A stretch of DNA of 64,000 nt from Camelus dromedarius (taxonomy: Eukaryota): NCBI RefSeq assembly GCF_036321535.1, contig NC_087455.1, forward strand, positions 1,302,001-1,366,000. Reading direction: 5' to 3'. The translations under genes and the position numbers were made by a program. Within the stretch, counting starts at the first letter, position 1. Each line of letters begins with the position of its first letter. Positions 29,281 to 61,070 of the stretch are shown here, one piece after another. The notes below the pieces were generated by a model that saw only the letters and a list, made by a program, of their open reading frames with translations, was not told the DNA's origin and made no database searches.

Positions 29281-29713
29281 TTTGACCTTGGCCCAAGGGA
29301 CGGCTGACCCTAGCCCCTCCCCACCTGACTGCAGACTTTGGTGAAGGTGCTACTCTACTCCCTGGGTCTAAGTGCCGCCGTGTTCGCCAGGCCCGAGCGC
29401 TACCATCCCCAGCGCTGGCTGGACCACCAGGACTCTGGCATCAGGTTCCCGCACCTGGCCTTTGGCTCTGGCGTGTGCCAGTGCCTGGGGCGGCGCCTGG
29501 CAGAAGTGGAGATGCTGCTCCTGATGCACCACATGAGTGGGCCTCGGTGGGCCCTGGCGGGCAGCCCGCTTGCAGATCCCAGGCTTCTGCCCCTAGGACG
29601 CCCAGCCCCAGGGCCCTGGACAGAACCCTGCCTCTGTCCTAGGTGCTGGAAAACTTCCTGGTGGAGTCACTGGTGCAAGAGGACATCAAGATGGTCTACT
29701 GCTTCATACTGAT
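29281..29713 (+). pseudogene. CYP11B remnant: end of intron 7, exon 8 (29335-29532), intron 8 and 5' part of exon 9 (29643-29713)
   Basis: Aligns to 49686-50141. There are 12 differences in the 198-nt exon 8, including R412L, F445S and R448C. The exon 8 donor is mutated from GT to AT, exons 1-7 are absent (L1 sequence upstream), and exon 9 is truncated by a deletion junction. Confidence 0.93.
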
Positions 29714-29717
29714 TTGT

Positions 29718-32133
29718 AAGTACTGTGCCTAATGGAGTCGTCCAGCAATATCTCAAGATACAAGTACATGATCCAAAAGCAGTCGTACTTCTCTTCATTG
29801 GTAATGCCAAATCCGAAAATACAATTAAGAAACCCATTCCATTTGCAAGAGCATCAAAAAGAGTGTAACACCTAGGAATTAAAAGATGTCCAAAATTTAT
29901 ACTCAGAAAACCACAAAGCACCGTGGAAAGAAATTAAAGAAGAGCTACAGAGTTGGAAAGCATCCTGCACCCACGAATCAGAAGATGCTGTCTTGCTCCC
30001 GTGGCGACACTCCTCATACAGGTCTCCAGACTCGACGCAACCCCTATGAAGACTCCAGCGGACTCCTTCGTAGAAAGTGCCAGGCTGACTCTAAAATTCA
30101 CAGGGAACGCAAGGAAACTAGAAAAGTGGTCCTGGACCAGTCTTCCCGCGGGCATGTAGACTATGCCCTGGGGCTGTTTCGTTTTTGACTAAAATACTCA
30201 ATCTCTGTTCCCTCAAGTGGCAATATACTTTTGTCCGTGTGTGAGTGGTGCCTAACAAGGAAAACAACGGATCAGAGCTAACACCACAAAGAAATCCGAG
30301 TACACAATACCCAAACCATCATGCTCTTTATTTCTCCCTCCAAACAAGCCCTAAATGGGTGACTTGCCAACGGGGGACCCCGTGGGTCACTGTCTCTGGC
30401 TCACAAAAGAGCAAAGGACAGCCAACTGGCTCTGGGGAATGGGGAGATGGTAAGACCCTCCAAAGGCAGCTTCTCATGTCAGTGTATTGCTGACCGCAAT
30501 GGAGGCAAAGCTCAGGAAAAAGGTTGACTGCCCTAATCGCACAGTTCCTTCCAATTCCTCCTCAACTGTCATTTCGGGGAGGATGTCCCTCTCAAGATTA
30601 CTAATACCCCCCTCGTTGCAGGTCATACTATTACAGCAATGAACAAAATAGAAAGAGTTAGAACGAAAGTATTTTCTCCTGGGGGCTTCAGGAGGCTGCT
30701 GAGAGGGGTGCACAAATGTGCAGTTGTTTGTGCAGTTCTTGTAAACGAATAATTCACGTTCATCGTAACCTAAAAAAGTAAAGATGACAATCATTGATTT
30801 CTCGTTTTCTGCTTACAAATATCAAAGCACGTTTATCTTAACTAGCTCCATCCCTCACGTGTTGTTACACTGCCTGAAATTCTTGATTGAGAAGACAATC
30901 CAAGTCCAATAAGGGTTCGGTGACTCCATGACACCTTCTCCTGGAGATGTTGTCTCGCTACACTGCCACCTCATCTCTGTATCTGGCCTCCCTATGAAGC
31001 TTCCTGGTGCCTGATCACGGAGCTGTACAAACGCATCGTCCTGTTCACCATTTGCTCTAAGAATTCTAGGGATCCGGAAGCAGAACGGAGCCCAGGAAAC
31101 ATGTTTTGCTGATGTCCCAAGGTCACACAGACCCTCCAAGCAGAGGGCCCTTGTCATCTGGCCTCCAGCTGACTTTCTGCAGCTGGCCTCACCCTGCTAG
31201 AACGGGCTCCCGCCGCACCCCTCTGCCTGCCGTTCCCCGCCCCCGGCCCAGCACGGAGGCTGACGCACATTCACACCCACCTGCTCCCCAGTGCAGCCCT
31301 GGTGCCCCGTCCCAAGTACAGTCCCACTGGGACGCCTGTGAGCGCCTTCGCTGGAGGACTGGCCAGTGCCCTCGACCAGCCAAAGCCCTGTTCAGGCTCC
31401 ACCTGAGGCCTGGCTCGAGAGTCCCTGAGTTAAGCTGCCGCGGCCTCACTCACCAGTTCTGTGCCCCTGGCCTCACACAGACACCTCCTCCCGGAGCTCA
31501 CCGGGGGCACCTACCCACTCGGGCGGCCTCACCTGCCTCAGAAAGTGCTGACGGCTGCGCCCCAGGCACCTGCTTTCCTTGATTTTCCGTTTGTGCCAAA
31601 GAGCTTGCTAAAGACCCACATTCTACAGAAAAGCGCACAATCGCAGGGCGACAGCTTCACGGACCCTCCCGAAGCGCACGTAACCGCAGAGCAGCATCCT
31701 GCTCGAGAAGCAGGCCTGGGTGGAAAGCCCCGCATTCCTCCCTCCGTTCCTCGACTCAGGCACGAGACGCGCCACGGCCAGAGGCGAGGAGGAAGCGCCC
31801 GGCTTTCCGAGCCTCCACGTGACTCGGCCTGCTTTTGAATCAACGGAAAGGAAATCCACCCGCGCTGCTCGTTTTTGCGTCTGCCGCCTCTTCTCTGCGG
31901 GGCTCTGTGCGGTCCGGCCCTGCCCCTGGCGAGGCCGCGCGGCGCTCCCTCTCGCGGTTGCGTACTTTCCACCGATGGACACACCTCACTTCACTGCGGA
32001 TGGACACGGGGCTGCTTCTGGGTTTTATCGAGCCCAGGGGGTGCTGCAGCGAGTACTCTTGTCCTTGTCTTGGGGGTGGGGTGGGGGACGTGCGAGTCTC
32101 ACGAGGTGTGTGCCAGGGCTGGCGACGCTGGGC
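29718..32133 (+). repeat. Direct segmental duplication, copy 1 (partner 54833-57247)
   Basis: Identical ORF translations at offset 25115/25114. By eye only four differences were found. Confidence 0.95.
30327..30332 (-). terminator. GML: GML polyadenylation signal AATAAA
   Basis: TTTATT on the plus strand, about 140 nt past the stop codon. Confidence 0.7.
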
Positions 32134-35100: not shown

Positions 35101-35347
35101 TCCTCCATCCTGACCCTCCCCTTGCTCACGGACACTCTCTAGTCCACCCTGTGGTCACCAGCTGCACTGGCAGTGGAGATCTCAGCTGGCTAAGATGATG
35201 AAAACTCCATTCAGACCCTTACCATGACCCCAATTCAGTGAAGCCTCCTCCTCTCTAAGGCAGAGAAGACTGATACTCACAGGCTTCAGGATCAATGTCA
35301 CCGTGTGGCCACCCCATGAAGAGGAGGAAGGCAAAGAGGAGCTTCAT
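30474..35347 (-). CDS. GML: Glycosylphosphatidylinositol-anchored molecule-like protein (LU domain), 156 aa; coding exons 35281-35347, 34556-34663, 30474-30769
   Basis: Exons of 67+108+296=471 nt with phase-1 GT/AG junctions translate to MKLLFAFLLFMGWPHGDIDPEAWTYNLKCYDCWVTNTFYCSNIRVCPYEIRRCLTISSRYDERELFVYKNCTNNCTFVHPSQQPPEAPRRKYFRSNSFYFVHCCNSMTCNEGGISNLERDILPEMTVEEELEGTVRLGQSTFFLSFASIAVSNTLT. It has 10 Cys and GML-typical motifs (NIRVCPY.IRRC, KNCTNNCTFV), and sits tail-to-tail with CYP11B as in human. Confidence 0.92.
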
Positions 35348-37616
35348 CCCTGTGGGAGCTTGAACCTGGAGGGAGGAGATCCAGGGTGCAAGTCAGCGAG
35401 GGCAGGGCTCCTTGTAGGGGCTTCTGGGCTCCCAGCTCCAACCAGCACGTGGGTCCCCACCTCCCGCTCTGGGCTGAGTGCTCCTCCGGGCAGGACCTGG
35501 CCAGCAGGCCTTTGCCACACACAAAGGCTTTGCCAAGCTCAAGCCTTCATCTCAGACCAAGACATCCTTCCTGCTCTCCATCTGGCAGAGCACAGCCAGG
35601 GCAGCGAGGTCCTGCGGCTGTTTCCACGCGGACCACACCCCAGGGCCGCACACCCTCAAGTGTTTCTCCTTATCTACTCGTTGACGCCCCACCTCAAGAG
35701 CAACCTGGGGAAAGTGCTGGAACATTGTCCTTTGAGGTATTTCCTGCCTGTACAAGGACCATGACACACGTAGGGCTGGGGACCAGAGGAGGGGAACTAG
35801 TAATGAAGATGCCAGAAGCCTAACTTGCCCTGTGGCTAGGAAGTGTGGACCCCATGCAGTCCTGTCTCCCTGGGCCTGGGCATCACAGAGCCCTGAATGA
35901 CTGCCGGGGGCAGGGGGGCCTGGGGCTCCTCACGCCTGAGCCAGGACACTAGCACTTGCTGGAGGGGCAGCCCCCAGGCACCAGGCAGTGCCTGCACCTG
36001 AAACATCACTTGCGGGGACCCACCTGCACCCTCACCGCTGCCAATGCCTATGGCCTCTGGGGAACCTGCCTCCCCCAGCCCCAGGCAGCCTCGCTCCCTG
36101 GGGCGCCCCTTCTCCCTTGCCGGGAGCGTGACATGCTCTCGGCGCTCTGTGCGGCTCCTCTCTGAGGGGAGCTCCTCGTCTGCTGCCGCCTGTCAACCCG
36201 AGGAGACCCACCCGGGTGGTGGCAGCCCTTGGCATGCAACCCCCACGGATCCAGCTGAGGGGCCCCCGACGGGGTCTGACTGTGCAGCAGGCAGCCATGC
36301 CCCTGAGGTGGGCACCCAGAGGTCCTGCCCCCGGCCCCCTGCTTTCCTAAGTGCAGCTCTCAACCCAGCTGCAGCCCAGGCCTTCCCACTTGGGAAGCTC
36401 CCGAGTACGGAGAATCGGGGTGAAGGTGGGTCAGCGCCAGGGCCCTGGAGGGGCTGCTCCTTTGACCAGCCAGCCCGCCCCCAGTGTGGACCCCCAACCT
36501 CTCCAGGCACAGATCCTCGTCCCCTGCAGCCCCTTCCCACTCGGTGCTGCCTGCCTTCCCTGCATCTGTCCCTTCCCTCAGCCACACTTGCTCCCGGGCC
36601 GGTCTCGTGAGCAGCTAGTGACCCAGAGCCAACGTAGTGAGGCCCTCTTCTCCCACTCGCCACACCAGACACTCCGGACATTTCTGTGCTGCAAATACCC
36701 AGAGAAGATGCTGACCACAACCCGTCAGATGTCTTCACGGACGCCCCACTGAGGTCTTTAGACAGATGGGAAATACCCAAGGGCTCAGATGAGGGACGCG
36801 GCAGAAATCAGACTGGAAAGTGTCCAGAAGCAACACGACTGCCGGCACCGTCTGTGAACGGCCAGTGCTCAGAGATTCAGGGTCTGACAGCTGAACAGGT
36901 CCTGGAAATAAAGCCAGGGCCCCTGAAAAGTGGAGAGTGGGGACTGAGATCCTCACACAGAACAGGATTCATCCAAGAGTGAAAGTGTCACAGAGCAAAA
37001 TGAACCACACTGTCTAAGATCGGCTTGGGCAGAGTCAACTCTTCCTGGCTTCCCATCGCCCAGAGACAGAATCCCGTGCCCTCAGCACAAACCATGCAAC
37101 CTCCCAGAAACCTGCCGATCTGAGAGCTGCATGGAGCTCAGGCTGAAGACAGAAACTCCCACGTGCACAGGCAACAGGAGCAGGAGTTACAGATGTGAGA
37201 GGCTCTCAGTCACAACGCAGCAGAGTCAGCCCAGACGTCGCCAGGGGCCGCTCAGCGCTGCCACCCACCCCACCCACACCCCACCCGGCTTGGGTCCTGA
37301 GCCGACGGAGTGGCCGGGCCCTCCCACAGCCTCCCTGCCAGAGGAGAGAGCAGGCATCCTCTGTGGTAACAAAGCCACCAACGTGCTGGCCAGGGTCTAT
37401 GCAAGTCCAGAGTCTCTGTGAAAAACCACAAGACGCAGAAGAGGCAGGACTGGAGGACTGCTATGCAAGAAAGCAGCGGTAGAAGGCAACCCCAGTTCAC
37501 CCAGAGGCTGATGTCAGCATCTAAGTGCTTGTAATTCATTATAATGAAAATATAAGGAGAAAGTGGTAACAAAAACGATTTTAAAAACATGAAAATCTTC
37601 AACAGTGAAACGACAT

Positions 37617-38106: not shown

Positions 38107-39503
38107 TCATCAAGAGAATCAAACAGACATTCTGAAACAGAAAAAATATCTAACAGCAAAAAACTCACTGGAAGGGATGCACAGCCAAGCAGACGCAGTG
38201 AACTACAACAGTGCAAAATGTGAAGACAGGCCCACAGGAAACACCCAAACTGACTCCCAGAGAGAGAGAAACAAGGGAGTGAACAGCACTGGGGAAACGA
38301 GACCCACAAACGAGAGTCCGACAGCCGCCATCCGCCGAGCCAGAGTCCTAGGAGGAGAGGACGGAGAAACAGACGCACATCTCTGAAGAGACGCTGGAGG
38401 ACACAGCCCGCTCCCAGGATGAGCGCGGGGCATCAGCCCACAGCCCACAGAGCTCAGGGCGGAAGGGCCCAAGCAGAAGAGACATGAGGAAGACCAAACT
38501 CAGACGCACCGCAGCTGAACCGTGGGAAACGACGTTTAACCAGTGAGAGCTGGAACGCCTCCCAGTGGAAAGCCAGGCGCAACTTAAGGCAGCAACAGTC
38601 CCACCGACTGCTGGTCCTTCAACACAAACCACGAGAAACAGAAAGCCTCAAGGACAATCACGCCTAAATGCTGTAGAAAGAAGACACCTGCCACCAAGAC
38701 TTCTATTCTACTTAAGGGAAAATATACTTAAAAATGAAGACAAAATGAATATGGTTTGATGCAAAAAAGGTTCGGAAGCCTCCTTATCAGCAGATCTCAC
38801 TACGAGAAACACTGACCGTGCAACAGGTTTAGACATAAGAGACACGACATCCAGAGCCCAAAGCCGAGGTAATGGGACTGAGATGCAGAAACAGCTCCGT
38901 TAGTCTCAGCCAGAGAAGACTTCAACATAAAGAGTCTCTCAAGAGATAAAGGGGTGTGGAGAATTCATGTCCATCAGGCATTTTTGGAAACACAAGTCAG
39001 GGCACTGTTTCTACTACAGCCATCTTATGCAAGAGAATCAGTCACTTCACCTGTTCGGAAATTAAGAACACAATTTCAAATAATCAACACCCCCACGCAC
39101 CCTCCCGATTATTCCCAGTAGAAAACACAAAATAGTTCGGGCAGCATGATAATAGACATATTACAAGTCAAAACCAGAGCAAAATAGCCTCAAGCCCTGG
39201 CAGGAAAAGGAGGGCTGACAAGCATAATTAGAAGTGCACCAAGACTGAAGACTTAAGAATCGCCCTTCTCACGTTAAAAAACCAGGAAAGCGACACCAAA
39301 CTCAACCAAAACACAGGGGCCCCGGAGAACAGAAAGCAGAAGCTGGAAGGTGGGGAGTCTGCCGCGTGGCAGGTGGGGGCTTGGGGACCCCGGAGTGGTA
39401 CTGCAGATGGAGGCGCTTTGGGCTTTGGATGTCTGGCACCAGCGGGATCCCGGATCCGTGCTCCAGGGCATCACGGCTGAACCCCAGGCCCAAAACCACT
39501 GAC

Positions 39504-39560
39504 CTGAGGGCTAGCAGGAGCCTGCAGGACTGCCCCCCCACCCCGCCTGCGCCCCGCCCA
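39504..39560 (-). other. GML: Putative non-coding exon 1 of GML (donor CCTCAG|GTCAGT, exon 3' end 39504; start approximate)
   Basis: Coding exon 2 begins only 2 nt before the ATG (acceptor at 35350-35351), so an upstream exon is required. This donor is at the edge of the nearest CpG island and is conserved in a diverged paralogous copy at 59430. Confidence 0.55.
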
Positions 39561-40432
39561 GACAGCTGGACGCTTCCCCCGCCCCCCTCCGGCCCCGGCC
39601 CCGGCCCCGGCCCCACTGCCCCACGGCCCCCACCCCCACCGGCTCCCACCCCCGCACGCCCGAGTCCCGCCCAGGCTTTCTGGAACCTTCCCCCACCCCC
39701 TCTGTCCCCTCCCGCCATCCCCGCCCCCACCCTGTTTCCCGCCCAGGCTTTCTGGAACCTTCCCCGTCCCCCAACCCCTATCCTGCCCAATCCTCTGGAC
39801 GCTTCCCCTGCACCCCTCAGTCCCCATCCCCCACCGGCTCCCACCCCCGCACGCCCGAGTCCCGCCCAGGCTTTCTGGAACCTTCCCCCACCCCCTCTGT
39901 CCCCTCCCGCCATCCCCGCCCCCACCCTGTTTCCCGCCCAGGCTTTCTGGAACCTTCCTCCGTCCCCCTGCCCGACCCAGTTCCCCGCCCCGAGCTTTGT
40001 GACCTTCCGCGGACACGACCTCGAGGGCCCGCACAGCCGGTGTGGCGCGGGGAGCCGCAGGTGGGCGCGGGGAGGCCGGGCGGGCTCCAGGCCCCGTTCT
40101 CTCAGCCGCAGGTCGGACGGGCGTCTCCCGACAGGCTTCGCGCGGCTTCCGGAAGGTTCGGCCTGGTCTCGGGGCGGCCCCGTTCCCCAGAGGCGCTTCC
40201 CTGAAGGGCCCTGCTGCAGGGGAGGTTCCAGAAGGTCTGGGCGGGAAACGGGGTTGGGGGGGACGGTGGGAGGGGACAGAGGGGGTGGGGGAAGAGTCCA
40301 GAGGTCTGGGCGGGACAGGGGTGGGGGAGGGGGAAGACAGTCCCAGAAGGTCTGGGCAGGACATGGGGAGAAGGGGAACTCCAGAGAGAACCTCTGGGGG
40401 AGGTTCCAGAAAGCCTGGGCAGGACTGGGGCA
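39561..40432. repeat. GC-rich minisatellite blocks in opposite orientations (39561-39960 C-rich; 40219-40432 G-rich) around a CpG core; unit core CCCGCCCAGGCTTTCTGGAACCTTCC
   Basis: The repeated core is directly visible, with a 195-bp higher-order period (39636 vs 39831). Confidence 0.9.
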
Positions 40433-42561
40433 GTGGAGAGGACTTCAGAGTGACCACGCCAAATGCTGGACAGGATACAAAGAAACCAGGTTGTTCCCGC
40501 ATTGCTGGTTACATGAAAAAATGGCGCAGCAGGTGTGTAGAACAGAGTGCAAGTTCCTTTAAAAACTGCTTATGCAATTACCATGAGATTCCCAAATCCA
40601 CTTCTGGGTGATTTCCCCAGAGACACTGAAACTGTGTCCACACAGAACACATCCATGGATGTTTACGGCAGCTTTATCTGAAATGCTCGGGAGAAAAACC
40701 CAGATGTCCTACAGTAGTGTGCAAACCACAGCACTCTCTCACGGAGGTGAGCTGCTCAGCAGGAAAAGCAAAAGTATTGCTGGACGTCCTGAGTTGACTG
40801 AATGCCTAGGGACTCATTCTTAATGACAAATGACACTCCACCAAGGTTACATAACACACTGTTCGTTTTGTATACCATTATAGGGATGACAAAGTTGCAG
40901 AAACGGACACCAAATCCATATCGCAGGGTCGCACTGTCTGGGGATCTGGGCGGGAAAGAGATTGATGCGTCCTTAGGAGGGATGATTGTGGGGCCAACAC
41001 CATTCTCTCCCCTCGCTTGGGGAGTGACACTAACCTAGTTAGTTGTGATACTATAGTTTTGCAAGATAGTGTCAGTGGGAATGACTGAGGAAAGCACACA
41101 CAGGATCTTTCTGTGTTTTGTGCCCATATATTTGAATATACAAACATCTCAAAGTAAAACGTTTAATGGAAAAGAAATTTTTAAACAACCAGATCATTAC
41201 TTGCATTACTATTTAAATGGCTACAGTTAGGAACCCAAGATTTTTGGGATAGACAAAAGATAGTACGTTCTCTTTACTAGAGGCGTGCTTTAAAATAAGG
41301 ACATGACAAGATTGAAAAAAATATATAGAAAAGGGTCTACAATTTGAATGCTGCCCAAGGGACTCTTACACACACACTGAGGCTAAGTAAACATTAACAC
41401 AAGAGCGTTACTTATGTGAAGAACCACATTTTGTAGAGGTGAAGGAATAAAATAGATACCACAGTCATCACAATCTAAATCCACACGTACCTGATAGCAC
41501 AGGATGAAAATACCTTGGTAGAACTTAGGTTCTAGGTACTGTGGGCAAAACAAAAACAAAAACTAAAACAGTCGCATAGTTGTCATAAACTCATCTGTCT
41601 CCATGGATTCTGGACCCTGAAGCAAGGAGACAGAATTTATTGTAGCCCTGGACTACGGTCACCATCGTTCCTCTGAAAAGACCAGACAGTAAATGTCTTC
41701 AGCTTCAGAGGCTGTCCAGTCTCTGTCACTCCTACAAAACGTTCTCTTTGTGGGGCTGGAACCAGACACAGAGGATGCGTAACCGTACGATCGTCCCTAT
41801 GATCCAGCAAAGCTTCCGTCACCGACACGTTGGTGGCCTGGGCTGGTCCCACAGGCTCTTGTCTGCCAGCCCCTGCTACAGACGGTCTGAGCAACACTTG
41901 CCCAGCGTCGCCAGCCCTGGCACACACCTCGTGAGACTCGCACGTCCCCCACCCCACCCCCAAGACAAGGACAAGAGTACTCGCTGCAGCACCCCCTGGG
42001 CTCGATAAAACCCAGAAGCAGCCCCGTGTCCATCCGCAGTGAAGTGAGGTGTGTCCATCGGTGGAAAGTACGCAACCGCGAGAGGGAGCGCCGCGCGGCC
42101 TCGCCAGGGGCAGGGCCGGACCGCACAGAGCCCCGCAGAGAAGAGGCGGCAGACGCAAAAACGAGCAGCGCGGGTGGATTTCCTTTCCGTTGATTCAAAA
42201 GCAGGCCGAGTCACGTGGAGGCTCGGAAAGCCGGGCGCTTCCTCCTCGCCTCTGGCCGTGGCGCGTCTCGTGCCTGAGTCGAGGAACGGAGGGAGGAATG
42301 CGGGGCTTTCCACCCAGGCCTGCTTCTCGAGCAGGATGCTGCTCTGCGGTTACGTGCGCTTCGGGAGGGTCCGTGAAGCTGTCGCCCTGCGATTGTGCGC
42401 TTTTCTGTAGAATGTGGGTCTTTAGCAAGCTCTTTGGCACAAACGGAAAATCAAGGAAAGCAGGTGCCTGGGGCGCAGCCGTCAGCACTTTCTGAGGCAG
42501 GTGAGGCCGCCCGAGTGGGTAGGTGCCCCCGGTGAGCTCCGGGAGGAGGTGTCTGTGTGAG
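39607..42561. repeat. Inverted segmental duplication, left arm (partner 56587-59345)
   Basis: Mirror ORFs with coordinate sum 99147 (e.g. 41637..42158- and 56989..57510+; 40042..40611+ and 58536..59105-). The left arm carries one extra 195-bp VNTR macro-unit. Confidence 0.95.
39677..40160. promoter_or_regulatory. Cluster of five perfect three-pentamer heat-shock elements (39677-39691, 39749-39763, 39872-39886, 39944-39958, 40146-40160)
   Basis: tTTCt-gGAAc-cTTCc occurs four times and cTTCc-gGAAg-gTTCg once, matching the HSF consensus. Function is not shown. Confidence 0.6.
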
Positions 42562-44902: not shown

Positions 44903-47900
44903 ATGGCGTTCCGGGCAAAGACCGCAGTGTGGAGGGCAGGGCCTTGGCTGTCCCTGCACAGGGCACGCACACTGGGCACCAGAGCTGCTCAGGCCCCCAA
45001 GAAGGTGCTGCCCTTCGAAGCCATACCCCAGTGTCCTGGCAACAAGTGGATGCGGGCGCTGCAGATCTGGAGGGAGCACGGCTCCGAGAACATGCACCTG
45101 GACATGCATCAGACCTTCCAGGAGCTGGGACCCATTTTCAGGTAAAGCTCTCCCTGAACACCTCAGCGAGAACACCCTGACTGGTGGTGGTCCCGCTGGC
45201 CGCGGAGTCCTGGCTGGGCTCAGGGTTCTGCCACATCCAGTCCTGGCGGGGAGTCTGGGGAATGGGGGAAGGGGCAGGTAGGGGGCTCCGCAGGGCTGGT
45301 CTGTGCCTTCAACCCTGGAGACCGTGGCTCTCCGTGGAAACAGAGCACTGTGCAGCTTGCTGCTGGGAGGACAGAACGCAGACACCAGAGGAGGAGAGGC
45401 TTCAGTGAGACTGCAGGAGGGACTGCCTGGTCTGAGCCAGCTGCAGGCCGTCTCTGCAGTGGGGCCCAAGGGAGGCCACATCCCCAGAGCAGGGCCTCGA
45501 GCTTTGTCCCACAGGTATGACGTGGGAGGGAGGCGCATGGTATTCGTGATGCTGCCCGAAGACGTGGCGAGGCTGCAGCAGGCGGAGAGCTTTCACCCTC
45601 AGCGGATGCTCGTGGAGCCCTGGCTGGCCTACCGACAGCACCGTGGCCTCAAACGTGGCGTGTTCTTGCTGTGAGGGCGGGTTGGGGTGCAGGGGGTGGG
45701 CAGTGGGAAGCGTGGATGCAGAGAGGAGGTGAGACAGGAGAGGCTCCAGCGCACACCCGCCTGGGGCCTCTCTAGGCAGGTGGAGAGAGGGTGACCGCCA
45801 GCTCCCGATGAGTGCCAGTCCCGAGGGGCTCAGGGGTGCCCCGGGCCGGGGAGGGGAGCAGGGGGCCTGGTGGGGACTCGAGCCAGGCCCTGTCCTCCAG
45901 GGAGAGGAAGAAGGCTAGGACTGCCATTCGGGAGCCCTCTCCAGCCTCCACAGGCCCCGAGGGGCTCGTGCACAGGTGGGACTTCTCGCCTTCTGCAGGT
46001 CAGACCCCCTGTAGGCCTGCAGGGAGCCCCCCCCACCCCCGTGGGCTCCGGGCTCTGTCCGGAGCCTGCTAGGAGAGCCCTGCTCTGATTCTCGCCCCGG
46101 AGGAGCGGAGGCTCTGTAGGGAGAGCAGCAGGTGGAACGGGCACGGGGCAGCGCACCCAAGCTGGGGATGAAGGTCTCCAGGGGCTGCTCCCGCTCCGGA
46201 CTGTGGGTGAGCGTCGGAAAAGCCTCCACCCCCAGAGAGGGAGACGTGGGTGCCAGGGGAGGGGCCTGCCAGTTTGCACAAACAGTGGGGCCCGGCAGCA
46301 GCCCGGGCCGGGGCTCCCGTCTCAGCCTGGGCGAAGTGCACGAGGCCCCCCTGAGGAAAGAGGTGCTGCCAAGGCCCACGCGTGGGCAGCCGGCCCCCCG
46401 AGAACCAGCAGGCGGCTTGCCGCCCCGCCCGCCTCCCGTCGTGGGGGGGCACAGGGCTGGGGCCAGCTGCTGGCTCCGGATGCCCTGACGCTCTGCGCTC
46501 TGCTCTACAGAAACGGGCCCAAGTGGCGCTCCGACCGGCTGCAGCTGAATCCGGACGTGCTGTCACTGCAGGCCGTGCAGAAGTTCGCGCCCCTGGTGGA
46601 CGAGGTGGCCAGGGACTTCTCCCAAACCCTGAGGGCGAGGGTGGTGCAGAACGCCCGGGGGAGCCTGACCCTGGACATCAAGCCCAGCATCTTCTGCTAC
46701 ACCATCGAAGGTGTGGGCGTGCAGCGGGGGTGCCGCTCAGAGGCTCGGAGTGGGCCGGGGCTAGGGCAGGGAGGGCTAGGGGAGGCGGCCAGGAGGCCCT
46801 GGGCTGCCTCAGGCTCAGGAACTGCCTCCTCCCTGCAGCCAGCAACTTAGTCCTTTATGGAGAGCGGCTGGGCCTCCTCGGCCACAACCCGAATGCTGAC
46901 AGCCTGAACTTCATCAGCGCGCTGGAGGCCATGTTCAAGTCCACAGTGCAGCTCATGTTCCTGCCCAGGAGCCTGTCACGCTGGACAAGCACCAGCATAT
47001 GGAAGGAGCACTTCGAGGCCTGGGACTGTATCTTCCAGTATGGTGAGGGCCGAGGATCCAGCAGCACTGGGACCAGGGACCCCAGGGCCCCCTCCACTCA
47101 CCACAGTCCAGGAGAGCAGAGGCCACGTGCCAGGGCTGGTGGCTTCTTTCTGGTCCCTGAGAGAGTGGGCAGGGAGGCTGGACTAGGCTGACCCTAAGAA
47201 CTGGGGGTGGCACACGGAGACCTGGGGCTTCTGAGGGCTGAAGGGCAGGAGGGTGACAAAGAGAAGTGCCCCCAGCCCCAGGCCCAGGGCCTCTGTCTCT
47301 CTGGGCCCCACAGCCAACAAAGCCATCCAGAGACTCTATCAGGAGCTGACCCTTGGCCGCCCGTGGCGCTACAGTGGCGTCGTGGCAGAGCTGCTCATGC
47401 ATGCAGACATGACCCTGGATGCCATCAAGGCCAACTCCATCGACCTCACTGCCGGGAGCGTGGACACGGTCAGGCCAGCAGCCAGCCCTTCCCGTAGAAC
47501 CGGGAGCCCTCCCCTTCCCATGCCAGACGGCTCGACCATGCCCCCTCCCCAGTCTGTGCCTCCAAAATGGCTAGACTTAGGCCTCAGCTTCTGAACTGAG
47601 AGGGGGAACATGGGCGCCAAGCCTCAGAGGGAAGGAGTTTGCAGCTCCTCCCGTGGGAAACCGTGCTCCAGGCAGAGTGCAGAGTGGATGAGGCCCAGGG
47701 GCATGCAGCTCCACAGACCCTGTGTGGATAATCTGGGTCCTGAGCCAACGGGGAAGGACCAAGGTGCAGCAGAGAGCTGCACGGGGAGACCCCCCAGTGA
47801 CAGATGACACTTAGCTCTCACCAAAGATCCTTTGGAGGGGACAGGCTGACGGGCAGGGCAGCATGGGGCTCCGGCTGGGGCGGGGGAGCAGGCGGCGGTA

Positions 47901-50184
47901 CAGTGCGGCGGGCAGGGCGGGCTCCAGGGCGCAGGGCCGACGAACCTTCCTGCCTCTAGACAGAGCCTTCATCTGCCAGCGTCTCTGAGGGCCTGCTCTG
48001 GGCCACGCACCCAGGATTCAGAGCAGAGGCACAGACCCATTGTGGAGAAACTCCCTGAGCAGGGGGTCTGTGATGCAGCCACCAGCTGAAAGAACCCAGG
48101 GGAGGGCATGTGCCTTCAGGGGGCAGCTCTGAGAGGAGGACTTCCTGGAGAAGGAGGGCTTTCCGTGGAATGCAGAAGAACCACACACAAGTCAGATGGG
48201 CCACGAAGAGGGGGCTGGGAGTGCAGCAGCCCGGGGCCAGCAACAGCAGACAGTGAAGAAAGGCCCTGAGGCTGAGTGGAGCCGACAGGGGCAGACAGGG
48301 TCAGGACCCCTGGCAGTAGGGGCCTTGGGCACCAGGCCTGTATCCAAGGCTGGAGGAAGCCAGTGCAGGGAGTGCCTCGGTCAGATTTCTGCTCCCTCAC
48401 GGGCCACAGGGCAGAGCACGGACTAAAGCTCAGGGTGCAGCCGAGAGGCTGTATCTGCCCATCAGAAGATGCCAGGGGCGTGCGTGTCGCCTTGGGGACG
48501 GCGTTCAGGAAAGACTTAGCTTCCCTCCCAGATTTTGGCCGGGGCTGGCAGACACCTCTCCCTGCACAGGGAAGTGATCCAGGAGGAGGAAAGGGGTAGG
48601 GTCTGGGACCTGCCTTTGGATGCCCAGGGGAGAAGCCCCACTGGGAGCAGTTAGACCTCGGGCTCCAGAACCCTCCCCCCTGAGTAGCTGGCAAGAGTGA
48701 GCCCCTCGTGGACACAGAGGAAGGTGAGAACCAGGCCCTGAAGTGGCTGGAGGAGGCCTGCATCTTCATTTGAGACTGGGGACACCTTCCCCGAGGGATT
48801 CAGGGGAAGTCGATGAGGTGGGTGGTTTTAGGCTCTTGAGGTCTCAGGTCTCTGGGCACGCAGGTCCCCTGTCCCCAGGGGTGGCCATCTTTCTGGGGAG
48901 GGTGCCCTGGGGGTGGAGGGGTGTGGCCCGTGCCAAGGTCCGAGCCCTGCTCCCCTGGCTCCTGCAGACAGCCTTTCCCTTGTTGATGACTCTCTTTGAG
49001 TTGGCTCGGAACCCGGATGTGCAGCAGGCCGTTCGCCAGGAGAGCCTGGTGGCTGAGGCCAGGATCTCTGAAAATCCCCAGAGGGCAACCACGGAGCTGC
49101 CACTGCTAAGGGCTGCCCTCAGGGAGACCTTGAGGTAGGCGTGGTAGACCTTGGCTGCCCCAGATGCCCTGGCCCCAGTGTCTGGAGAGCCCACTCCCTA
49201 GGGCTTGAGGACAGATCCTGGGGCTGACAAGCAGCTTTGCCCGAGGACACATCCCCCTGTGCCTTCCCTTCCTCCCCTAAAAGGATGGGGTGCTTCTTCC
49301 TCTGGGATGCCACCTCAATGTCCTGGGCCGTCCTCCATCCCGTCCCCACTGGCCCGGGGCTGCTCAGGCTGGGGGAGCTTTGGCTGAGCTCCAGAGCTGC
49401 CAGGAAGCAGCTGCTCAGGAGCGGGGCTTCCCAGTGCCAGAAGGGACCTGTGAGGGCAGTGGCCAGCTGCCCTTGGCCCATGAGTGCTGGGCCGGGAAGG
49501 CTGCAGAAGGGAAGTGAGGGGCCCTTTCACAGCGGAGGACCTTGTTGGACATCCCTATGCACAGGCTGTATCCCGTGGGTATCACCGTGGAGCGACGGGT
49601 GAGCTCAGACTTGGTGCTGCAGAACTACCACATCCCGGCTGGGGTGAGTGAGGCCCCAGAACCCTTCTGGCTGATACTCAGCCCGTTTGACCTTGGCCCA
49701 CGGGGCGGCTGACCCTAGCCCCTCCCCACCTGACTGCAGACTTTGGTGAAGGTGCTACTCTACTCCCTGGGTCGAAATGCAGCCGTGTTCGCCACGCCCG
49801 AGCGCTACCATCCCCAGCGCTGGCTGGACCACCAGGACTCTGGCGTCAGGTTCCCACACCTGGCCTTTGGCTTTGGTGTGCGCCAGTGCCTGGGGCGGCG
49901 CCTGGCAGAGGTAGAGATGCTGCTCCTGATGCACCATGTGAGTGGGCCGGGCTGGGGCCTGGGCGGGCAGCCCACTTGCAGACCCCAGGCTTCTGCTCCT
50001 GGGACGCCCAGCCACAGGGTCTTGGAAGGCGGGAGAGGCTGGGCCAGGCAGAACCCTGCCTCTGTCCTAGGTGCTGAAAAACTTCCTGGTGGAGTCACTG
50101 GTGCAAGAGGACATCAAGATGGTCTACCGCTTCATATTGATGCCCTCCACCCTCCCACTCCTTACCTTCCGGGCCATCAACTAG
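44903..50184 (+). CDS. CYP11B1: Mitochondrial cytochrome P450 11B (steroid 11-beta-hydroxylase, probably bifunctional), 503 aa; exons 44903-45141, 45515-45670, 46511-46710, 46839-47042, 47314-47468, 48968-49134, 49565-49643, 49740-49937, 50071-50184
   Basis: Exon sizes 239/156/200/204/155/167/79/198/114 total 1512 nt, the canonical CYP11B structure, all with GT-AG introns and an open frame. Motifs include the I-helix AGSVDTTA, K-helix ETLR and heme motif [10 protein letters not shown] (Cys450), plus an N-terminal mitochondrial presequence. Confidence 0.97.
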
Positions 50185-51706
50185 TCATGTCGCTGCACTG
50201 TCGGGCTGGGTAGGCCACAAGCCCCCCTATGCCTGACTCAAGGCCCCCTCGGTTCTCTCCTGGGGGCCCTGCTATCTAAGCCACACCACTGTCCAGCCAG
50301 CACTTTGCACAGATGGAACAGCCAGGCCCTCTAAGGATCAGGGCTTGCCATCATGAGCAGTAAGGCCAGAGCAGAGCTGGGGATGAGTCTTGGTTGCAGG
50401 TCCTGGCCATGCGCCCAGTCTCACCAGGGTCTTCTCCAGCAAGGAGCACCATCTGGGGGCTTGTGCAGCCCTGATGCCCCAGCACTAGCTCCAGGCCCCT
50501 CGTGTGTCCATCCGAGTGAGAGGCCTCAGATCCCACCCTCTGCTCCCCTTCCAGTCTCTTACGTCCTCTGTGCTCAACTCTGCCCCCATGCAAGAGCTGA
50601 CGACTTGGGTGTCCCCTGTCCTGCTCGTTGCCATTTCAAGCATCATGCCTTTTGTTCGCAGTGCTCTGGCATGCCACTGCCCTTCAGGCTGGGTTGTTAT
50701 CTGTCCATCTACCTCTTCTGCTCAGCCCACTTGGGCTCCTCCTGACAGTGCCTCCCTCCCAGATCTTGGACTGGGCTGGCAGACACCTCTCCCTGCACGT
50801 CCTCTGGGATTGGGCTGAAGAACCCAGCCAAGGGCCTGGAGAGGCAGGTTGAAAGTAGTGTTTACCAGAAGAGTAGCTACCAAAAAGCTGACTTGAACAT
50901 GTGAAAGCAGGAGGGGTGGTGAACCCCTCTGGCAGGAGGCAGGGCGACCACAGAGAAGCCTCTACAAGGAGGGTGTGTAGCCATCTCATGCTCCCTTTAG
51001 TAAAGCCCTCCGTCTGAAGTGCCTGTCTGGCCTCTGACAGTGACCCACAGGTGAGAGGCCACCTTGGCCATGTGGGTGGGAGAGGCTTGTGTTCAACAAG
51101 CCAGCCAGGGTCCCCCAGCTGGCAGGAGCGAGCAGTCTGTCTCGTGTCACCGGGGGCACAGTGACGCCCCCCCATGTACAAAGGGGGCCCAGAGGCAAGA
51201 TGAGAGGTGAGGGAGTCTCTCCACTCTCCCTCCGTCCCGTGTCACCCCCGTCTCACCCGCTGAGATCCAGGTCCTCAGTCACAGCAAGGGAGCAAGGGAG
51301 GAGGCGTCACCTTTCTGGCTGCACCAACCCTGCCAGCTCCAGGCCACCCCAGTGGCATCAGTCCGGTCCCAAGACCCCTGGAGGGGATGACCAGAGTCTG
51401 CACTCTCCTCACCTCTCCACTCCATCCACAGCTCACAGCAGGCCTGCTGCCAGGACCGTGCACTACTCTCAACCCCATCCGGCACTGCTGAAGGGGACTT
51501 GGAGAATCCCGGAGCAGAGAGGAGGGAAGTTCCAAGCACAAGATGGAGCCCTGCCTTAGCACGTGGGCTCAGCCCTCAATCCCGCTGAGACTCACCCTCT
51601 TCACGTGGGGATTCCTTAGAGTTACCAACTCGCCGGGCCCAGTGAGGACACAACTGACAGGACCGTATTTGGCAAATGCCCAGATTTCTGGCTCAGCTGG
51701 CACTCA

Positions 51707-54329: not shown

Positions 54330-55300
54330 ACCACATCCAGCAGCATGTAAAAGGAATTCTACATTCCGGACCAGTGGAATTCATCCCAGGAGTAAAGGTT
54401 GGCTTAATACCCCCAAGTCAAGGACTTGCCATCGGACAATAACCCCGTCCGTAGCATACAGAGGAAAATCACACTCCCACCTTCACAGACGCAGAAAGAG
54501 CATTTAACAAAAGTCAGCGCTGCTGCCGTGGTAAGAAATACTCCACAAACCGGGAGTAGAAGGGACTTTCTTCAACTGATAAAGGACATCCATTGAAAGC
54601 CCACAGCTAACACCATTCTGAAGAGGGAAGGACTGGCTGCTGTCCTAAGATTAGGAACAAGCATGCCTGCTCTGACCGCTCCCATTCACCATGGTCCTGG
54701 AGGTTCTAGCCAGAGCAGTTAGGCTCTCAGAATGAGCGGAAGTCATCCAAGTTGGAACGGAAGGAGGAAAACTCTCTCTATTCACAGATCATATGATCTT
54801 GTCTAGAAAACGACCTAAGGAAATCATTTTAAAAGTACTGTGCCTAATGGAGTCGTCCAGCAATATCTCAAGATACAAGTACATGATCCAAAAGCAGTCG
54901 TACTTCTCTTCATTGGTAATGCCAAATCCGAAAATACAATTAAGAAACCCATTCCATTTGCAAGAGCATCAAAAAGAGTGTAACACCTAGGAATTAAAAG
55001 ATGTCCAAAATTTATACTCAGAAAACCACAAAGCACCGTGGAAAGAAATTAAAGAAGAGCTACAGAGTTGGAAAGCATCCTGCACCCACGAATCAGAAGA
55101 TGCTGTCTTGCTCCCGTGGCGACACTCCTCATACAGGTCTCCAGACTCGACGCAACCCCTATGAAGACTCCAGCGGACTCCTTCGTAGAAAGTGCCAGGC
55201 TGACTCTAAAATTCACAGGGAACGCAAGGAAACTAGAAAAGTGGTCCTGGACCAGTCTTCCCGCGGGCATGTAGACTATGCCCTGGGGCTGTTTCGTTTT
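54330..55300 (+). mobile_element. Old L1 ORF2 relic; its 3' part is duplicated at 29718-30180
   Basis: Decayed RT-region sequence. The deletion breakpoint of copy 1 falls inside it. Confidence 0.65.
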
Positions 55301-57247: not shown

Positions 57248-59345
57248 AAGTGTTGCTCAGACCGTCTGTAGCAGGGGCTGGCAGACAAGAGCCTGTGGGA
57301 CCAGCCCAGGCCACCAACGTGTCGGTGACGGAAGCTTTGCTGGATCATAGGGACGATCGTACGGTTACGCATCCTCTGTGTCTGGTTCCAGCCCCACAAA
57401 GAGAACGTTTTGTAGGAGTGACAGAGACTGGACAGCCTCTGAAGCTGAAGACATTTACTGTCTGGTCTTTTCAGAGGAACGATGGTGACCGTAGTCCAGG
57501 GCTACAATAAATTCTGTCTCCTTGCTTCAGGGTCCAGAATCCATGGAGACAGATGAGTTTATGACAACTATGCGACTGTTTTAGTTTTTGTTTTTGTTTT
57601 GCCCACAGTACCTAGAACCTAAGTTCTACCAAGGTATTTTCATCCTGTGCTATCAGGTACGTGTGGATTTAGATTGTGATGACTGTGGTATCTATTTTAT
57701 TCCTTCACCTCTACAAAATGTGGTTCTTCACATAAGTAACGCTCTTGTGTTAATGTTTACTTAGCCTCAGTGTGTGTGTAAGAGTCCCTTGGGCAGCATT
57801 CAAATTGTAGACCCTTTTCTATATATTTTTTTCAATCTTGTCATGTCCTTATTTTAAAGCACGCCTCTAGTAAAGAGAACGTACTATCTTTTGTCTATCC
57901 CAAAAATCTTGGGTTCCTAACTGTAGCCATTTAAATAGTAATGCAAGTAATGATCTGGTTGTTTAAAAATTTCTTTTCCATTAAACGTTTTACTTTGAGA
58001 TGTTTGTATATTCAAATATATGGGCACAAAACACAGAAAGATCCTGTGTGTGCTTTCCTCAGTCATTCCCACTGACACTATCTTGCAAAACTATAGTATC
58101 ACAACTAACTAGGTTAGTGTCACTCCCCAAGCGAGGGGAGAGAATGGTGTTGGCCCCACAATCATCCCTCCTAAGGACGCATCAATCTCTTTCCCGCCCA
58201 GATCCCCAGACAGTGCGACCCTGCGATATGGATTTGGTGTCCGTTTCTGCAACTTTGTCATCCCTATAATGGTATACAAAACGAACAGTGTGTTATGTAA
58301 CCTTGGTGGAGTGTCATTTGTCATTAAGAATGAGTCCCTAGGCATTCAGTCAACTCAGGACGTCCAGCAATACTTTTGCTTTTCCTGCTGAGCAGCTCAC
58401 CTCCGTGAGAGAGTGCTGTGGTTTGCACACTACTGTAGGACATCTGGGTTTTTCTCCCGAGCATTTCAGATAAAGCTGCCGTAAACATCCATGGATGTGT
58501 TCTGTGTGGACACAGTTTCAGTGTCTCTGGGGAAATCACCCAGAAGTGGATTTGGGAATCTCATGGTAATTGCATAAGCAGTTTTTAAAGGAACTTGCAC
58601 TCTGTTCTACACACCTGCTGCGCCATTTTTTCATGTAACCAGCAATGCGGGAACAACCTGGTTTCTTTGTATCCTGTCCAGCATTTGGCGTGGTCACTCT
58701 GAAGTCCTCTCCACTGCCCCAGTCCTGCCCAGGCTTTCTGGAACCTCCCCCAGAGGTTCTCTCTGGAGTTCCCCTTCTCCCCATGTCCTGCCCAGACCTT
58801 CTGGGACTGTCTTCCCCCTCCCCCACCCCTGTCCCGCCCAGACCTCTGGACTCTTCCCCCACCCCCTCTGTCCCCTCCCACCGTCCCCCCCAACCCCGTT
58901 TCCCGCCCAGACCTTCTGGAACCTCCCCTGCAGCAGGGCCCTTCAGGGAAGCGCCTCTGGGGAACGGGGCCGCCCCGAGACCAGGCCGAACCTTCCGGAA
59001 GCCGCGCGAAGCCTGTCGGGAGACGCCCGTCCGACCTGCGGCTGAGAGAACGGGGCCTGGAGCCCGCCCGGCCTCCCCGCGCCCACCTGCGGCTCCCCGC
59101 GCCACACCGGCTGTGCGGGCCCTCGAGGTCGTGTCCGCGGAAGGTCACAAAGCTCGGGGCGGGGAACTGGGTCGGGCAGGGGGACGGAGGAAGGTTCCAG
59201 AAAGCCTGGGCGGGAAACAGGGTGGGGGCGGGGATGGCGGGAGGGGACAGAGGGGGTGGGGGAAGGTTCCAGAAAGCCTGGGCGGGACTCGGGCGTGCGG
59301 GGGTGGGAGCCGGTGGGGGTGGGGGCCGTGGGGCAGTGGGGCCGG
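56587..59345. repeat. Inverted segmental duplication, right arm (partner 39607-42561)
   Basis: Reverse complement of the left arm apart from the VNTR copy number and three small differences at 56590-56645. Confidence 0.95.
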
Positions 59346-59392
59346 TGGCGGGGACGGAGGAAGGTTCCAGAAGGTCTGGGCAGGACTCAGGG
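58715..59392. repeat. Mirror copy of the minisatellite/CpG cassette with four perfect HSEs (58987-59001, 59189-59203, 59261-59275, 59359-59373)
   Basis: Reverse complement of the left cassette. The last HSE lies outside the near-identical arm. Confidence 0.85.
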
Positions 59393-61070
59393 CGGTGAGG
59401 GCAGCGCTGAAGGCTCAGACTCGGCCTCAGGTCAGTGTGTGTGGGTCCCGGGGCTCGGCCCTGCTCCCCTGTAGGAGGGGTCACAGATCCCGGTGGCACC
59501 GCCCTTGTGTTCCGCCCGGCAGAATAGCATCCCTGCCCTGGGGTCCCATGGCCTCCTCTGCGCACCTATCAATCCCTCCTGCGGGCGTCCCCGTCAACCC
59601 CCTGCACGGTGCCGTATACCGCCACCTTCCTCTGGGACGGATGGTCCCCTGCACCCACCTGACATCTTCAGCGCTGAGATTCCTGCCCCACCTGGACCCC
59701 ACCTAGCATCCCCTCTCCTGAGTCTTGAGGCTCCCCAACTCCCAGCTCATACACTGATGCCTTGTAAATTCTACGTTTATTTAAATTAAGCCCCTAGGAG
59801 CATCGGGCATTTCAGGCTACAACAATTCGCAGACCTGACATTCCCTTATCTTTCAGTTAGTCAGCACCATCAGCGTGTGAGTCAGGAGGGCAGCGTGGAG
59901 GTCTGACCAGGCCGTCGCTTTCTTGCCCTCAGCAGAGAGGGAGAGCAGGCTACAGGCGGCCGTGGAACTTGGCCCTCTGCACCCTTTCCTGACCTCCGCG
60001 CTGGAATGGGGTGGCGGTGGGGTGGGTCAGAGTAATCCGGGATCCAAAATAATCCCCAGGATCTTTTTTCCAGAGATCTCCTCACGTGGTTTCTTTCTGG
60101 TTCACACCAAATGAGGCTCCTTACCGCACGTGTTTGGAGCCGACTCACCCACGCGGTATTACTAGTGCAGCTACTCGCTAATTCACGATGGTTATTGATC
60201 TGAGACCCGCCGCACTGGATTGTCACATATGCTGGCAAGTTCAAACACTTCTGTGGAAAAACTATAAATGTAAGATTAGTTTCATTTGCAAAGAATACAC
60301 ATTTTGCCTGAATTGGGAGTGAGAAGAAGGCGTCAGCGAAGTTGGCCCCGATGGCCCAGTTCTCCCGTCATCTGGTTTCCTTCCCGCGCCATCTTTGCTC
60401 TATCGGGGCAGCGGAAGCAGTGGGAAGGGCCGCCTGTTTTACTGCTCATTGACTTAACCGTGTTCTTATCCGCACAGAAGTCTCTGTACCTCGTAATACT
60501 GTGCTTAGCAATCCAAAAATAGTCTAAATCCCATCCCCAGCCCGTTTCACCTGTTTCCTGCAGAAGCCTTAGATTCCCCCACCCAGGGCTATGCAGTCAG
60601 ATTCAGGACCTTCAGTCTCTAACTCTAGAATTCAGCCTCTTGTTCAAATATTTTCTGCTCTGTGCATGATTCTCATAATGGGTTGAATCTGGGCTAGAAT
60701 ATATACAGCACTTTTTTCATCCCTGGCATTTTATTTAAAATACTTGAAACAGTAAAGCTGAAAGAACTTACAGTGCATTCAAGGATACCTACCACTGGAG
60801 TCTACGCCCAGGGCCTCATGCATGTTGAGCGTGCACGCTACACTGACCCGTCTCCTGCTCCTTCTGCAGCCGTTCTTTAACTCAGACCATCTTTTGAGTC
60901 ATTTTAAGCTGAGCTGCAGATATCAGCATTCTTTCCCCTACAAACTGCAGCAGTTTGCCTCGTATGATTCCTGCTTTGTGTCCTATCTAAAAATTCTTTG
61001 GAGAACTCAAGATTGCAAAAATTGTTCCTGTTTCCTTCTAGAAGCTTTCTGGTTTTGTATTTAGATAAGT

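What the first reader, a model, noticed from the sequence alone, without database searches (positions are those of the whole stretch)
39561..40432. Minisatellite that amplifies a perfect heat-shock element plus GC box at the GML promoter, 4.7 kb upstream of CYP11B
Seen: the VNTR unit CCCGCCCAGGC-TTTCTGGAACCTTCC couples a GC box to tTTCt-gGAAc-cTTCc, a perfect three-pentamer HSE. Four such HSEs lie at 39677-39958, a fifth independent one (cTTCc-gGAAg-gTTCg) at 40146-40160, and two-pentamer versions in the opposite block (40219-40432). The array abuts the putative GML exon 1 (donor 39504). Established: HSF1/HSF2 trimers bind inverted nGAAn arrays cooperatively, HSFs are major spermatogenic regulators, and GML is testis-associated. 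From memory, the human LY6K 5' region (a GML relative) also contains GAAGGTTCCAGAA, which would make the motif ancestral; this needs checking. Inference: a single ancestral HSE was expanded into a copy-number-variable HSF-binding cassette. It could make GML, and possibly the adjacent cortisol/aldosterone enzyme CYP11B, heat- or stress-responsive in a camelid. The copies are not statistically independent evidence of function.
Basis: partly seen in the sequence, partly recalled or inferred. Interest (0 to 1): 0.8.

Follow-up and report, generated by a model that had tools for sequence, protein, structure and literature searches.

The report
Conserved heat-shock elements at GML promoter
The repeats carry genuine three-part heat-shock-factor binding motifs that sit at the start of the GML gene in nine of eleven mammals checked and were multiplied in camels and other hoofed mammals, which fits published data listing GML as a heat-shock-factor target, but nothing ties them to the neighbouring steroid gene CYP11B.

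Summary
Five perfect TTCnnGAAnnTTC motifs lie at the stated coordinates, against about 0.005 expected from shuffles of that 1.1 kb. The "minisatellite" is looser than described: a 195-bp block present 1.8 times, next to a non-repeated CpG core and an inverted, degenerate block.

The region is the 5' CpG island of GML. A Camelus ferus gene model splices an exon inside it to the GML signal-peptide exon. A second donor-like site at 39504 recurs in hippo, horse, colugo and elephant.

The same motif sits upstream of GML in 9 of 11 mammals examined. Elephant, colugo and beaver have an inverted pair; camel, hippo, sperm whale, warthog and horse have arrays. In the sites compared across species the GAA/TTC triplets mostly stay fixed while the spacers vary. 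So an ancestral element was expanded, but the expansion is not camel-specific.

Published data agree: HSF1Base lists human GML as a direct, activated HSF1 target, and mouse Gml is among genes induced by heat shock. I found no evidence on regulation of CYP11B, and the LY6K recollection could not be tested. Part of the camel "amplification" is the junction of a 99.85% identical inverted segmental duplication. The scan's other notes on this window (s1-200382, s1-200411) describe that duplication and the mirror cassette. Verdict: real and probably functional, with moderate novelty.

The parts
39497..39509 (-). Donor-like site CCTCAG|GTCAGTG (GT at 39503-39502), a candidate end of a non-coding GML exon 1
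   Evidence: Read and located. The same architecture (motif, then 45-70 bp, then CAG|GTCRG) is seen in hippo, horse, colugo (alignment A1) and elephant.
39541..39626 (-). Promoter-proximal degenerate unit (GAAGCGTCCAGCTG on the GML strand), two GC boxes and a (CCGGCC)n / C-rich simple repeat
39627..39783 (-). First copy of the 195-bp block, with perfect three-pentamer motifs at 39678-39690 and 39750-39762, each followed by a GC box
39822..39978 (-). Second copy of the 195-bp block, with motifs at 39873-39885 and 39945-39957. Its start coincides with the start of the 99.85% inverted segmental duplication.
39979..40218 (.). Non-repeated CpG-rich core. It holds the donor used by the Camelus ferus gene model (GAG|GTCGTG, GT at 40019-40018, minus strand) and the fifth motif at 40147-40159.
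   Evidence: The core with its motif aligns to warthog, horse (reverse strand) and sea lion (alignment A4).
40219..40432 (+). Inverted, degenerate block of four units that are G-rich on the + strand. Only two-pentamer motifs remain, at 40226-40233 and 40404-40411.
   Evidence: (family D2, inverted pairs I1-I12)
58715..59437 (+). Mirror cassette B. It is identical to 39822-40432 up to 59324, then has its own unit (motif at 59360) and the same donor-like 13-mer on the + strand at 59425-59437. Homology to GML intron 1 stops about 100 nt further on.
35282..35365 (-). GML exon 2 (approximate bounds): acceptor 18 nt before the ATG at 35347, then the signal peptide
   Evidence: tblastn with GML orthologues and mapping of P0113
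34554..34682 (-). GML exon 3, the N-terminal half of the Ly6/uPAR domain
30477..30758 (-). GML last coding exon. A 99.8% identical copy lies at 55592-55873.
44903..45142 (+). CYP11B exon 1 (ATG at 44903), divergent from GML and 4.47 kb from the cassette
   Evidence: E 4e-24 to the human CYP11B2 chain

Best explanation
The stretch 39.5-40.4 kb is the CpG-island promoter and first-exon region of GML. Its conserved core is a pair of oppositely oriented, perfect three-pentamer heat-shock elements. These are binding sites for HSF1/HSF2 trimers and probably make GML inducible by heat or proteotoxic stress. In even-toed ungulates and in horse, the roughly 40-bp unit carrying the element plus a GC-rich tail was multiplied into a short, degenerate array. 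In the camel, two of the copies were added by a recent inverted segmental duplication. Shown here: the motifs, their excess over chance, their position at the GML 5' end, and their presence in 9 of 11 mammals. Taken from the literature: HSF1 binding and activation of human GML, and heat induction of mouse Gml. Inferred: that these motifs are what HSF1 binds, and that a larger number of copies changes the response.
For: Five perfect motifs against 0.005 expected from shuffles. None of the window's 13 other CpG-island-like segments contains a motif. The same motif lies at the GML 5' CpG island in hippo, sperm whale, warthog, horse, sea lion, colugo, beaver and elephant, with 2-5 observed against at most 0.008 expected in each. 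Among the perfect motifs and the aligned central site the spacers vary (GG, GT, AG, GA, GC, CC, CG; CA, TA, CG, GG), and the GGAA and TTCC cores that an ETS factor would need are not kept. At the central site the third pentamer sits on opposite sides of a shared GAAccTTC in elephant and in camel. A Camelus ferus gene model (P0113) matches 161 of 162 residues along 40502-40017 on the minus strand and then continues into GML exons 2 and 3. A donor-like site recurs downstream of the motif in hippo, horse, colugo and elephant. HSF1Base lists human GML as 'activated' and 'direct interaction'. Mouse Gml is among 243 heat-induced genes, about 47th by fold change. The human GML promoter CpG island is hypomethylated in sperm.
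Against: No occupancy or expression data exist for the camel. Within the arrays the triplets are no better kept than the spacers (0.76 against 0.72 when units are picked by their GC-rich tail), and only about 14 of 35 units are perfect, so the arrays themselves look free to decay. The promoter-proximal unit has lost the motif in camel, hippo, horse and warthog. Cow and tamandua show no motif and no CpG island within 10 kb upstream. I could not confirm that the human and mouse promoters carry the motif. The transcription start is unknown, and under the P0113 model the four perfect motifs lie in intron 1, not upstream of the start.
Confidence: 0.6

Rival explanations
1. It is a neutral GC-rich minisatellite. 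The heat-shock-like word is simply part of a repeat unit that spreads by unequal exchange and gene conversion in a recombination-prone CpG island and has no regulatory role.
For: The G-strand unit contains GGGCAGGA, which resembles the classical minisatellite core (the resemblance is from my own knowledge). Units decay freely, and inside the arrays triplets are no better conserved than spacers. The cassette sits at the edges of inverted or direct duplications in camel, horse, colugo, sea lion and whale.
Against: Species without any array (elephant, colugo, beaver) still keep two perfect motifs in 400-500 bp, against 0.001 or fewer expected. Sites compared across species keep the triplets while spacers and phase change. 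GML is recorded as an HSF1 target and as heat-induced.
Confidence: 0.15
2. The conserved word is the site of a different factor (an ETS-family, STAT/BCL6-like or unknown zinc-finger protein) at an ordinary Sp1-plus-ETS CpG-island promoter. HSF does not act through it.
For: The camel central site is the palindrome CTTCCGGAAG, and the first hippo and whale units read CCGGAAGT, a good ETS word. GC boxes accompany every unit.
Against: GGAA and TTCC are not conserved: elephant and horse have AGAAGG, and most central sites read TTCTAGAA. STAT and BCL6 sites need a 3-nt spacer, whereas here the spacer is always 2 nt (own knowledge of the consensus; spacing).
Confidence: 0.15
3. The cassette acts as a stress-responsive enhancer of the adjacent CYP11B gene as well as, or instead of, GML.
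For: It lies 4.5-5.3 kb upstream of the CYP11B ATG and divergent from it. A mirror copy lies on the other side of the gene. Sperm whale shares the head-to-head layout.
Against: I found no data linking HSF to CYP11B; CYP11B1 did not occur in the stored (truncated) HSF1Base tables, though LY6K did not either. In warthog the p450 gene ends upstream of the cassette and points the same way as GML, so the layout is not conserved while the cassette is.
Confidence: 0.07

Closest known systems
Heat-shock elements of HSP gene promoters (such as HSPA1A), bound by HSF1 trimers
   Same: At least three contiguous inverted nGAAn pentamers, the definition quoted in PMC11059408. Several elements occur per promoter, combined with GC boxes.
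   Different: The gene encodes a GPI-anchored Ly6-family protein, not a chaperone. The elements sit in a GC-skewed, quasi-palindromic CpG island and are multiplied as part of a roughly 40-bp repeat. Binding has not been shown for this sequence.
Human GML as catalogued in HSF1Base (PMC6888953, Tables S2 and S3)
   Same: It is the orthologous gene, recorded as a direct and activated HSF1 target. Mouse Gml is heat-induced (PMC6265442).
   Different: Those are genome-wide screen entries with no site mapped. The conserved paired element and its expansion in ungulates did not turn up in the papers searched.
HSF1-bound tandem repeats (human satellite III of nuclear stress bodies)
   Same: Tandemly repeated DNA that offers many HSF sites (own knowledge; reviewed in PMC8535310, seen).
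   Different: Satellite III is a megabase-scale pericentromeric (GGAAT)n without perfect elements. Here there are a few units at a single-copy gene promoter.
Regulatory promoter minisatellites (INS VNTR, HRAS1 minisatellite)
   Same: A GC-rich repeat next to a promoter whose unit contains a transcription-factor site (own knowledge).
   Different: The camel array is short, irregular and not called by Tandem Repeats Finder. Polymorphism is not shown.

Membership tests
Heat-shock element (HSF1/HSF2 trimer site) | Three or more contiguous nGAAn pentamers in alternating orientation with 2-nt spacers | tested here: met
   Five perfect sites in 39678-40159 and four in the mirror cassette
Heat-shock element (HSF1/HSF2 trimer site) | Occurrence beyond chance and conservation of the triplets rather than the spacers | tested here: met
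   Observed 2-5 against at most 0.008 expected in nine species. Spacers and phase vary among the sites compared across species. Within the arrays the test does not discriminate.
Heat-shock element (HSF1/HSF2 trimer site) | HSF occupancy in vivo | not testable with these tools
   Only indirect evidence: human GML is listed as 'direct interaction' in HSF1Base. The source papers are not held.
Heat-shock element (HSF1/HSF2 trimer site) | Heat or stress induction of the linked gene | not testable with these tools
   Mouse Gml is among 243 heat-induced genes. There are no camel data.
Minisatellite / VNTR | Head-to-tail array of 10-100-bp units | tested here: inconclusive
   Tandem Repeats Finder finds no array in 39640-39978. 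The repeat finder gives a 195-bp block present 1.8 times and four 40-nt units with spacings of 46-69 bp in the inverted block. Sperm whale has a clean 40-bp array of 3.7 copies.
Minisatellite / VNTR | Copy-number polymorphism within a population | not testable with these tools
   Only differences between species and between the two camel cassettes (4 against 3 outer motifs) were seen.
GML promoter / first exon | CpG island at the 5' end, spliced to the coding exons | tested here: met
   A CpG-island-like segment spans 39601-40300. The P0113 model joins 40502-40020 to exons 2 and 3. The position upstream of GML is shared in nine species.
GML promoter / first exon | Mapped transcription start | not testable with these tools
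   No CAGE or RNA-seq data are available. Two candidate donors exist, at 40019 and 39504.
CYP11B regulatory element | Conserved linkage to and orientation towards CYP11B | tested here: not met
   Camel and sperm whale are head-to-head. In warthog the p450 gene ends upstream of the cassette on the GML strand.

The most novel reading that the evidence does not exclude
The cassette is a symmetric, GC-skewed bidirectional heat-responsive promoter. Its two outward-facing repeat blocks make it a recurrent breakpoint, and it has repeatedly seeded inverted duplications and inversions that reshuffle GML and the 11-beta-hydroxylase gene in separate mammalian lineages (camel, horse, colugo, sea lion, whale). 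That would link a stress-activated promoter to structural evolution of a steroidogenic locus.
Probability: 0.15. Interest if true: 0.65.

Novelty: new variant of a known kind. Interest (0 to 1): 0.42.

Why it matters
GML is a poorly understood p53-inducible Ly6-family gene. A heat-shock element pair present from elephant to camel gives a concrete, testable cis-element for its listing as an HSF1 target, and it suggests GML belongs to an ancient non-chaperone arm of the heat-shock response. The lineage-specific multiplication offers a natural series, from 2 to 5 or more perfect sites per cassette, for testing how the number of elements tunes induction. It does not single out camels, and it gives no reason to think that cortisol or aldosterone synthesis is heat-regulated through it.

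Tried and rejected
- **Rfam:** a scan of the whole window found nothing.
- **Triplets versus spacers inside the arrays:** two ways of picking units (nhmmer seed; anchoring on the GC-rich tail) gave only 0.93 against 0.85 and 0.76 against 0.72. This does not discriminate, because units are recently homogenised and local alignment trims the ends.
- **A second Ly6 gene driven by cassette B:** the cysteine-patterned ORF at 60182-60319 has no Pfam match and only a 7-residue BLASTP match. Homology of the B flank to GML intron 1 ends after about 100 nt. Rejected.
- **Mouse Gml locus:** no murid GML protein came back from any of the three protein searches, so the motif could not be checked in the species with heat-shock data.
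- **Red deer and marmot loci:** not on record.
- **Source papers:** Page 2006 and Mendillo 2012 are not held.
- **LY6K 5' region:** no sequence was available, so this was not tested.
- **ETS, STAT and BCL6 readings:** considered and set aside on grounds of spacing and conservation.
- **Right flank from 40440:** it looks like a LINE-1 fragment, but that is from memory and was not tested.
- **Earlier findings:** look-ups by words and by sequence added nothing.

Full report
**What is in the sequence.** Window 39500-40500 is 72-74% G+C. GC skew switches from -0.57 (39600-39999) to +0.36 (40200-40599). The pattern TTCnnGAAnnTTC occurs at 39678, 39750, 39873 and 39945 (all TTCTGGAACCTTC) and at 40147 (TTCCGGAAGGTTC). 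The whole window holds 10 matches against 0.5 expected from dinucleotide shuffles. Shuffling the 1.1-kb cassette alone gives 0.005 expected against 5 observed. Two-pentamer remnants (TTCCAGAA) lie at 40226 and 40404, and there are 13 GGGCGG/CCGCCC cores.

**Repeat anatomy.** Tandem Repeats Finder does not report the left block. The repeat finder and a self-BLAST show a 195-bp segment present 1.8 times (39627-39783 and 39822-39978, 93-97% identical). Each copy carries two motif-plus-GC-box cores 72 bp apart. To the right lies a non-repeated CpG core (about 39979-40218), which contains the fifth motif. Beyond it is an inverted, more degenerate block of four roughly 40-nt units (40219-40432) that pairs with the left block at 73-93% complementarity. 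The whole is a quasi-palindrome: a centre flanked by two blocks, each G-rich on the strand that reads outward.

**A segmental duplication contributes to the amplification.**
- 39822-42561 is 99.85% identical to the reverse complement of 56587-59324.
- 29718-32133 is 99.83% identical to 54833-57247.
- 31472-32133 is 100% identical to the reverse complement of 41900-42561.
- The 39822 boundary is exactly the start of the second 195-bp copy, so two of the four left-block motifs came with this event. Either the event is very recent or it is an assembly artefact.
- The mirror cassette (58715-59437) has three outer motifs plus the central one. It also has the identical donor-like 13-mer on the + strand at 59425-59437. 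Its homology to GML intron 1 stops about 100 nt later.

**Gene context.**
- GML lies on the minus strand. The signal-peptide exon has its ATG at 35347, the Ly6-domain exon is at 34682-34554, and the last exon is at 30758-30477.
- An intact CYP11B lies on the plus strand with its ATG at 44903 and its haem-binding exon at 49734-50210.
- A CYP11B remnant and a copy of the last GML exon lie at 29329-29709 and 55592-55873.
- The cassette is 4.2-5.1 kb upstream of the GML ATG and 4.5-5.3 kb upstream of the CYP11B ATG, between the two divergent genes.

**Is it the GML promoter?** A Camelus ferus gene model, P0113, is mislabelled "translation initiation factor IF-2". It matches 161 of 162 residues along 40502-40017 on the minus strand. 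It then continues into the GML exon whose acceptor lies 18 nt before the ATG, and on into the next exon. The window is therefore from a Camelus species. At least one gene model starts GML transcripts in or beyond the cassette, using a donor at 40019.

The arrangement is motif, then 45-70 bp, then CAG|GTCRG, and it is seen in hippo, horse and colugo (alignment A1) and in elephant. A review lists five exons for human GML, so non-coding 5' exons are expected. The transcription start itself is unknown. Under the P0113 model the four perfect motifs are just inside intron 1, and the fifth is in exon 1.

**Comparative evidence.** I fetched the GML locus with 10 kb of upstream flank from ten other mammals.

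| Species | Locus | Motifs upstream of GML |
|---|---|---|
| Hippo | L001 | 4 perfect motifs, 481-1109 |
| Sperm whale | L002 | 5 perfect motifs, 2932-3302, including a clean 40-bp array of 3.7 copies; a further cluster of 3 near 18.5 kb |
| Warthog | L007 | 5 perfect motifs, 8049-8426 |
| Horse | L003 | 2 perfect motifs plus runs of up to seven in-phase pentamers |
| Sea lion | L005 | 3 perfect motifs |
| Colugo | L004 | 3745 and 3908 |
| Beaver | L010 | 7630 and 7912 |
| Elephant | L008 | 1543 and 1692 |
| Cow | L006 | no motif and no CpG island within 10 kb |
| Tamandua | L009 | no motif and no CpG island within 10 kb |

In every positive species the motifs lie in the CpG island upstream of GML, and shuffles expect at most 0.008. 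The three species with no array carry one pair in opposite orientation, 150-280 bp apart. That is the simplest candidate for the ancestral state.

Among the perfect motifs and the aligned central site, the first spacer reads GG, GT, AG, GA, GC, CC or CG and the second reads CA, TA, CG or GG. GGAA and TTCC are not invariant, which argues against an ETS site. At the central site the third pentamer lies on opposite sides of a shared GAAccTTC in elephant and in camel. The camel central site with its flanks aligns to warthog, to horse on the reverse strand, and to sea lion (A4).

**Limits of that evidence.** Inside the arrays the triplets are not clearly better kept than the spacers, and only about 14 of 35 units are perfect. 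The promoter-proximal unit has lost the motif in camel, hippo, horse and warthog. What appears to be maintained is the presence of some perfect sites, not every unit.

**Literature.**
- HSF1Base lists human GML (ENSG00000104499) as "activated" among its targets and as a "direct interaction" in its cell-type tables (PMC6888953 supplements).
- Mouse Gml is one of 243 transcripts enriched after heat shock of utricle explants, about 47th by fold change, among Hsp genes (PMC6265442 Table 3).
- The human GML promoter CpG island is reported as hypomethylated in sperm (PMC3653781).
- HSF5 is reported to prefer a single GAA rather than this element (PMC11059408).
- No paper describing a heat-shock element at GML turned up in the searches.

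**Conclusion.** The most likely reading (confidence about 0.6) is an ancient HSF-responsive GML promoter whose element-bearing unit was multiplied in ungulates. The multiplication is not camel-specific, and part of it in the camel is a duplication junction. I found no evidence on CYP11B regulation, and the CYP11B-GML orientation differs in warthog. The LY6K recollection, the population polymorphism and the motif's presence in human and mouse could not be tested here.

Noticed in passing
window 29718-32133, 39822-42561, 54833-59324: Three-way mosaic of near-identical segments (99.83-100%). The block 54833-59324 joins the GML 3' part to the reverse complement of 39822-41899, which is exactly the junction expected if the 9.8 kb between the 662-bp inverted repeats (31472-32133 and 41900-42561) were inverted. 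This may be a real duplication, or both orientations of an invertible segment may have been assembled.
   Followed up: partly
L003 (horse) 1-4084 vs 9119-5038; L004 (colugo) 1606-3052 vs 9263-7832; L005 (sea lion) 6606-7241 vs 9899-9302: Inverted duplications of 99.9%, 89% and 80% identity lie immediately upstream of GML in three other orders. The motif cassette is inside the arms (horse) or between them (colugo, sea lion). This suggests recurrent palindrome formation at this promoter.
   Followed up: partly
L002 (sperm whale) 18423-23547: A partial GML duplicate in which cassette units are fused directly to intron 3 and the last exon, at 87-99% identity to the main copy. This is the same make-up as the camel copy at 55.6-59.4 kb.
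   Followed up: no
window 40502-40020 (-) plus 35365-34548 (-): The public Camelus ferus model named 'translation initiation factor IF-2 isoform X2' (P0113) is a GML transcript model. Its proline-rich N-terminus is an ORF read through the GC-rich repeat, so the name is almost certainly wrong.
   Followed up: yes
L007 (warthog) 1-3831: A called 503-residue p450 gene ends about 4.2 kb upstream of the cassette on the same strand as GML. In camel and sperm whale, CYP11B is head-to-head with GML. The orientation of CYP11B relative to GML is evolutionarily labile.
   Followed up: partly
window 11803-12242 (-): Two exon-like ORFs with the Ly6 cysteine pattern, probably LY6D judging by position and sequence. 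Not examined further.
   Followed up: no
window 29329-29709 (+): A remnant of the CYP11B haem-binding exon in which the consensus FGxGxRxCxG reads [10 protein letters not shown], with the arginine replaced. This is consistent with a pseudogene copy.
   Followed up: no
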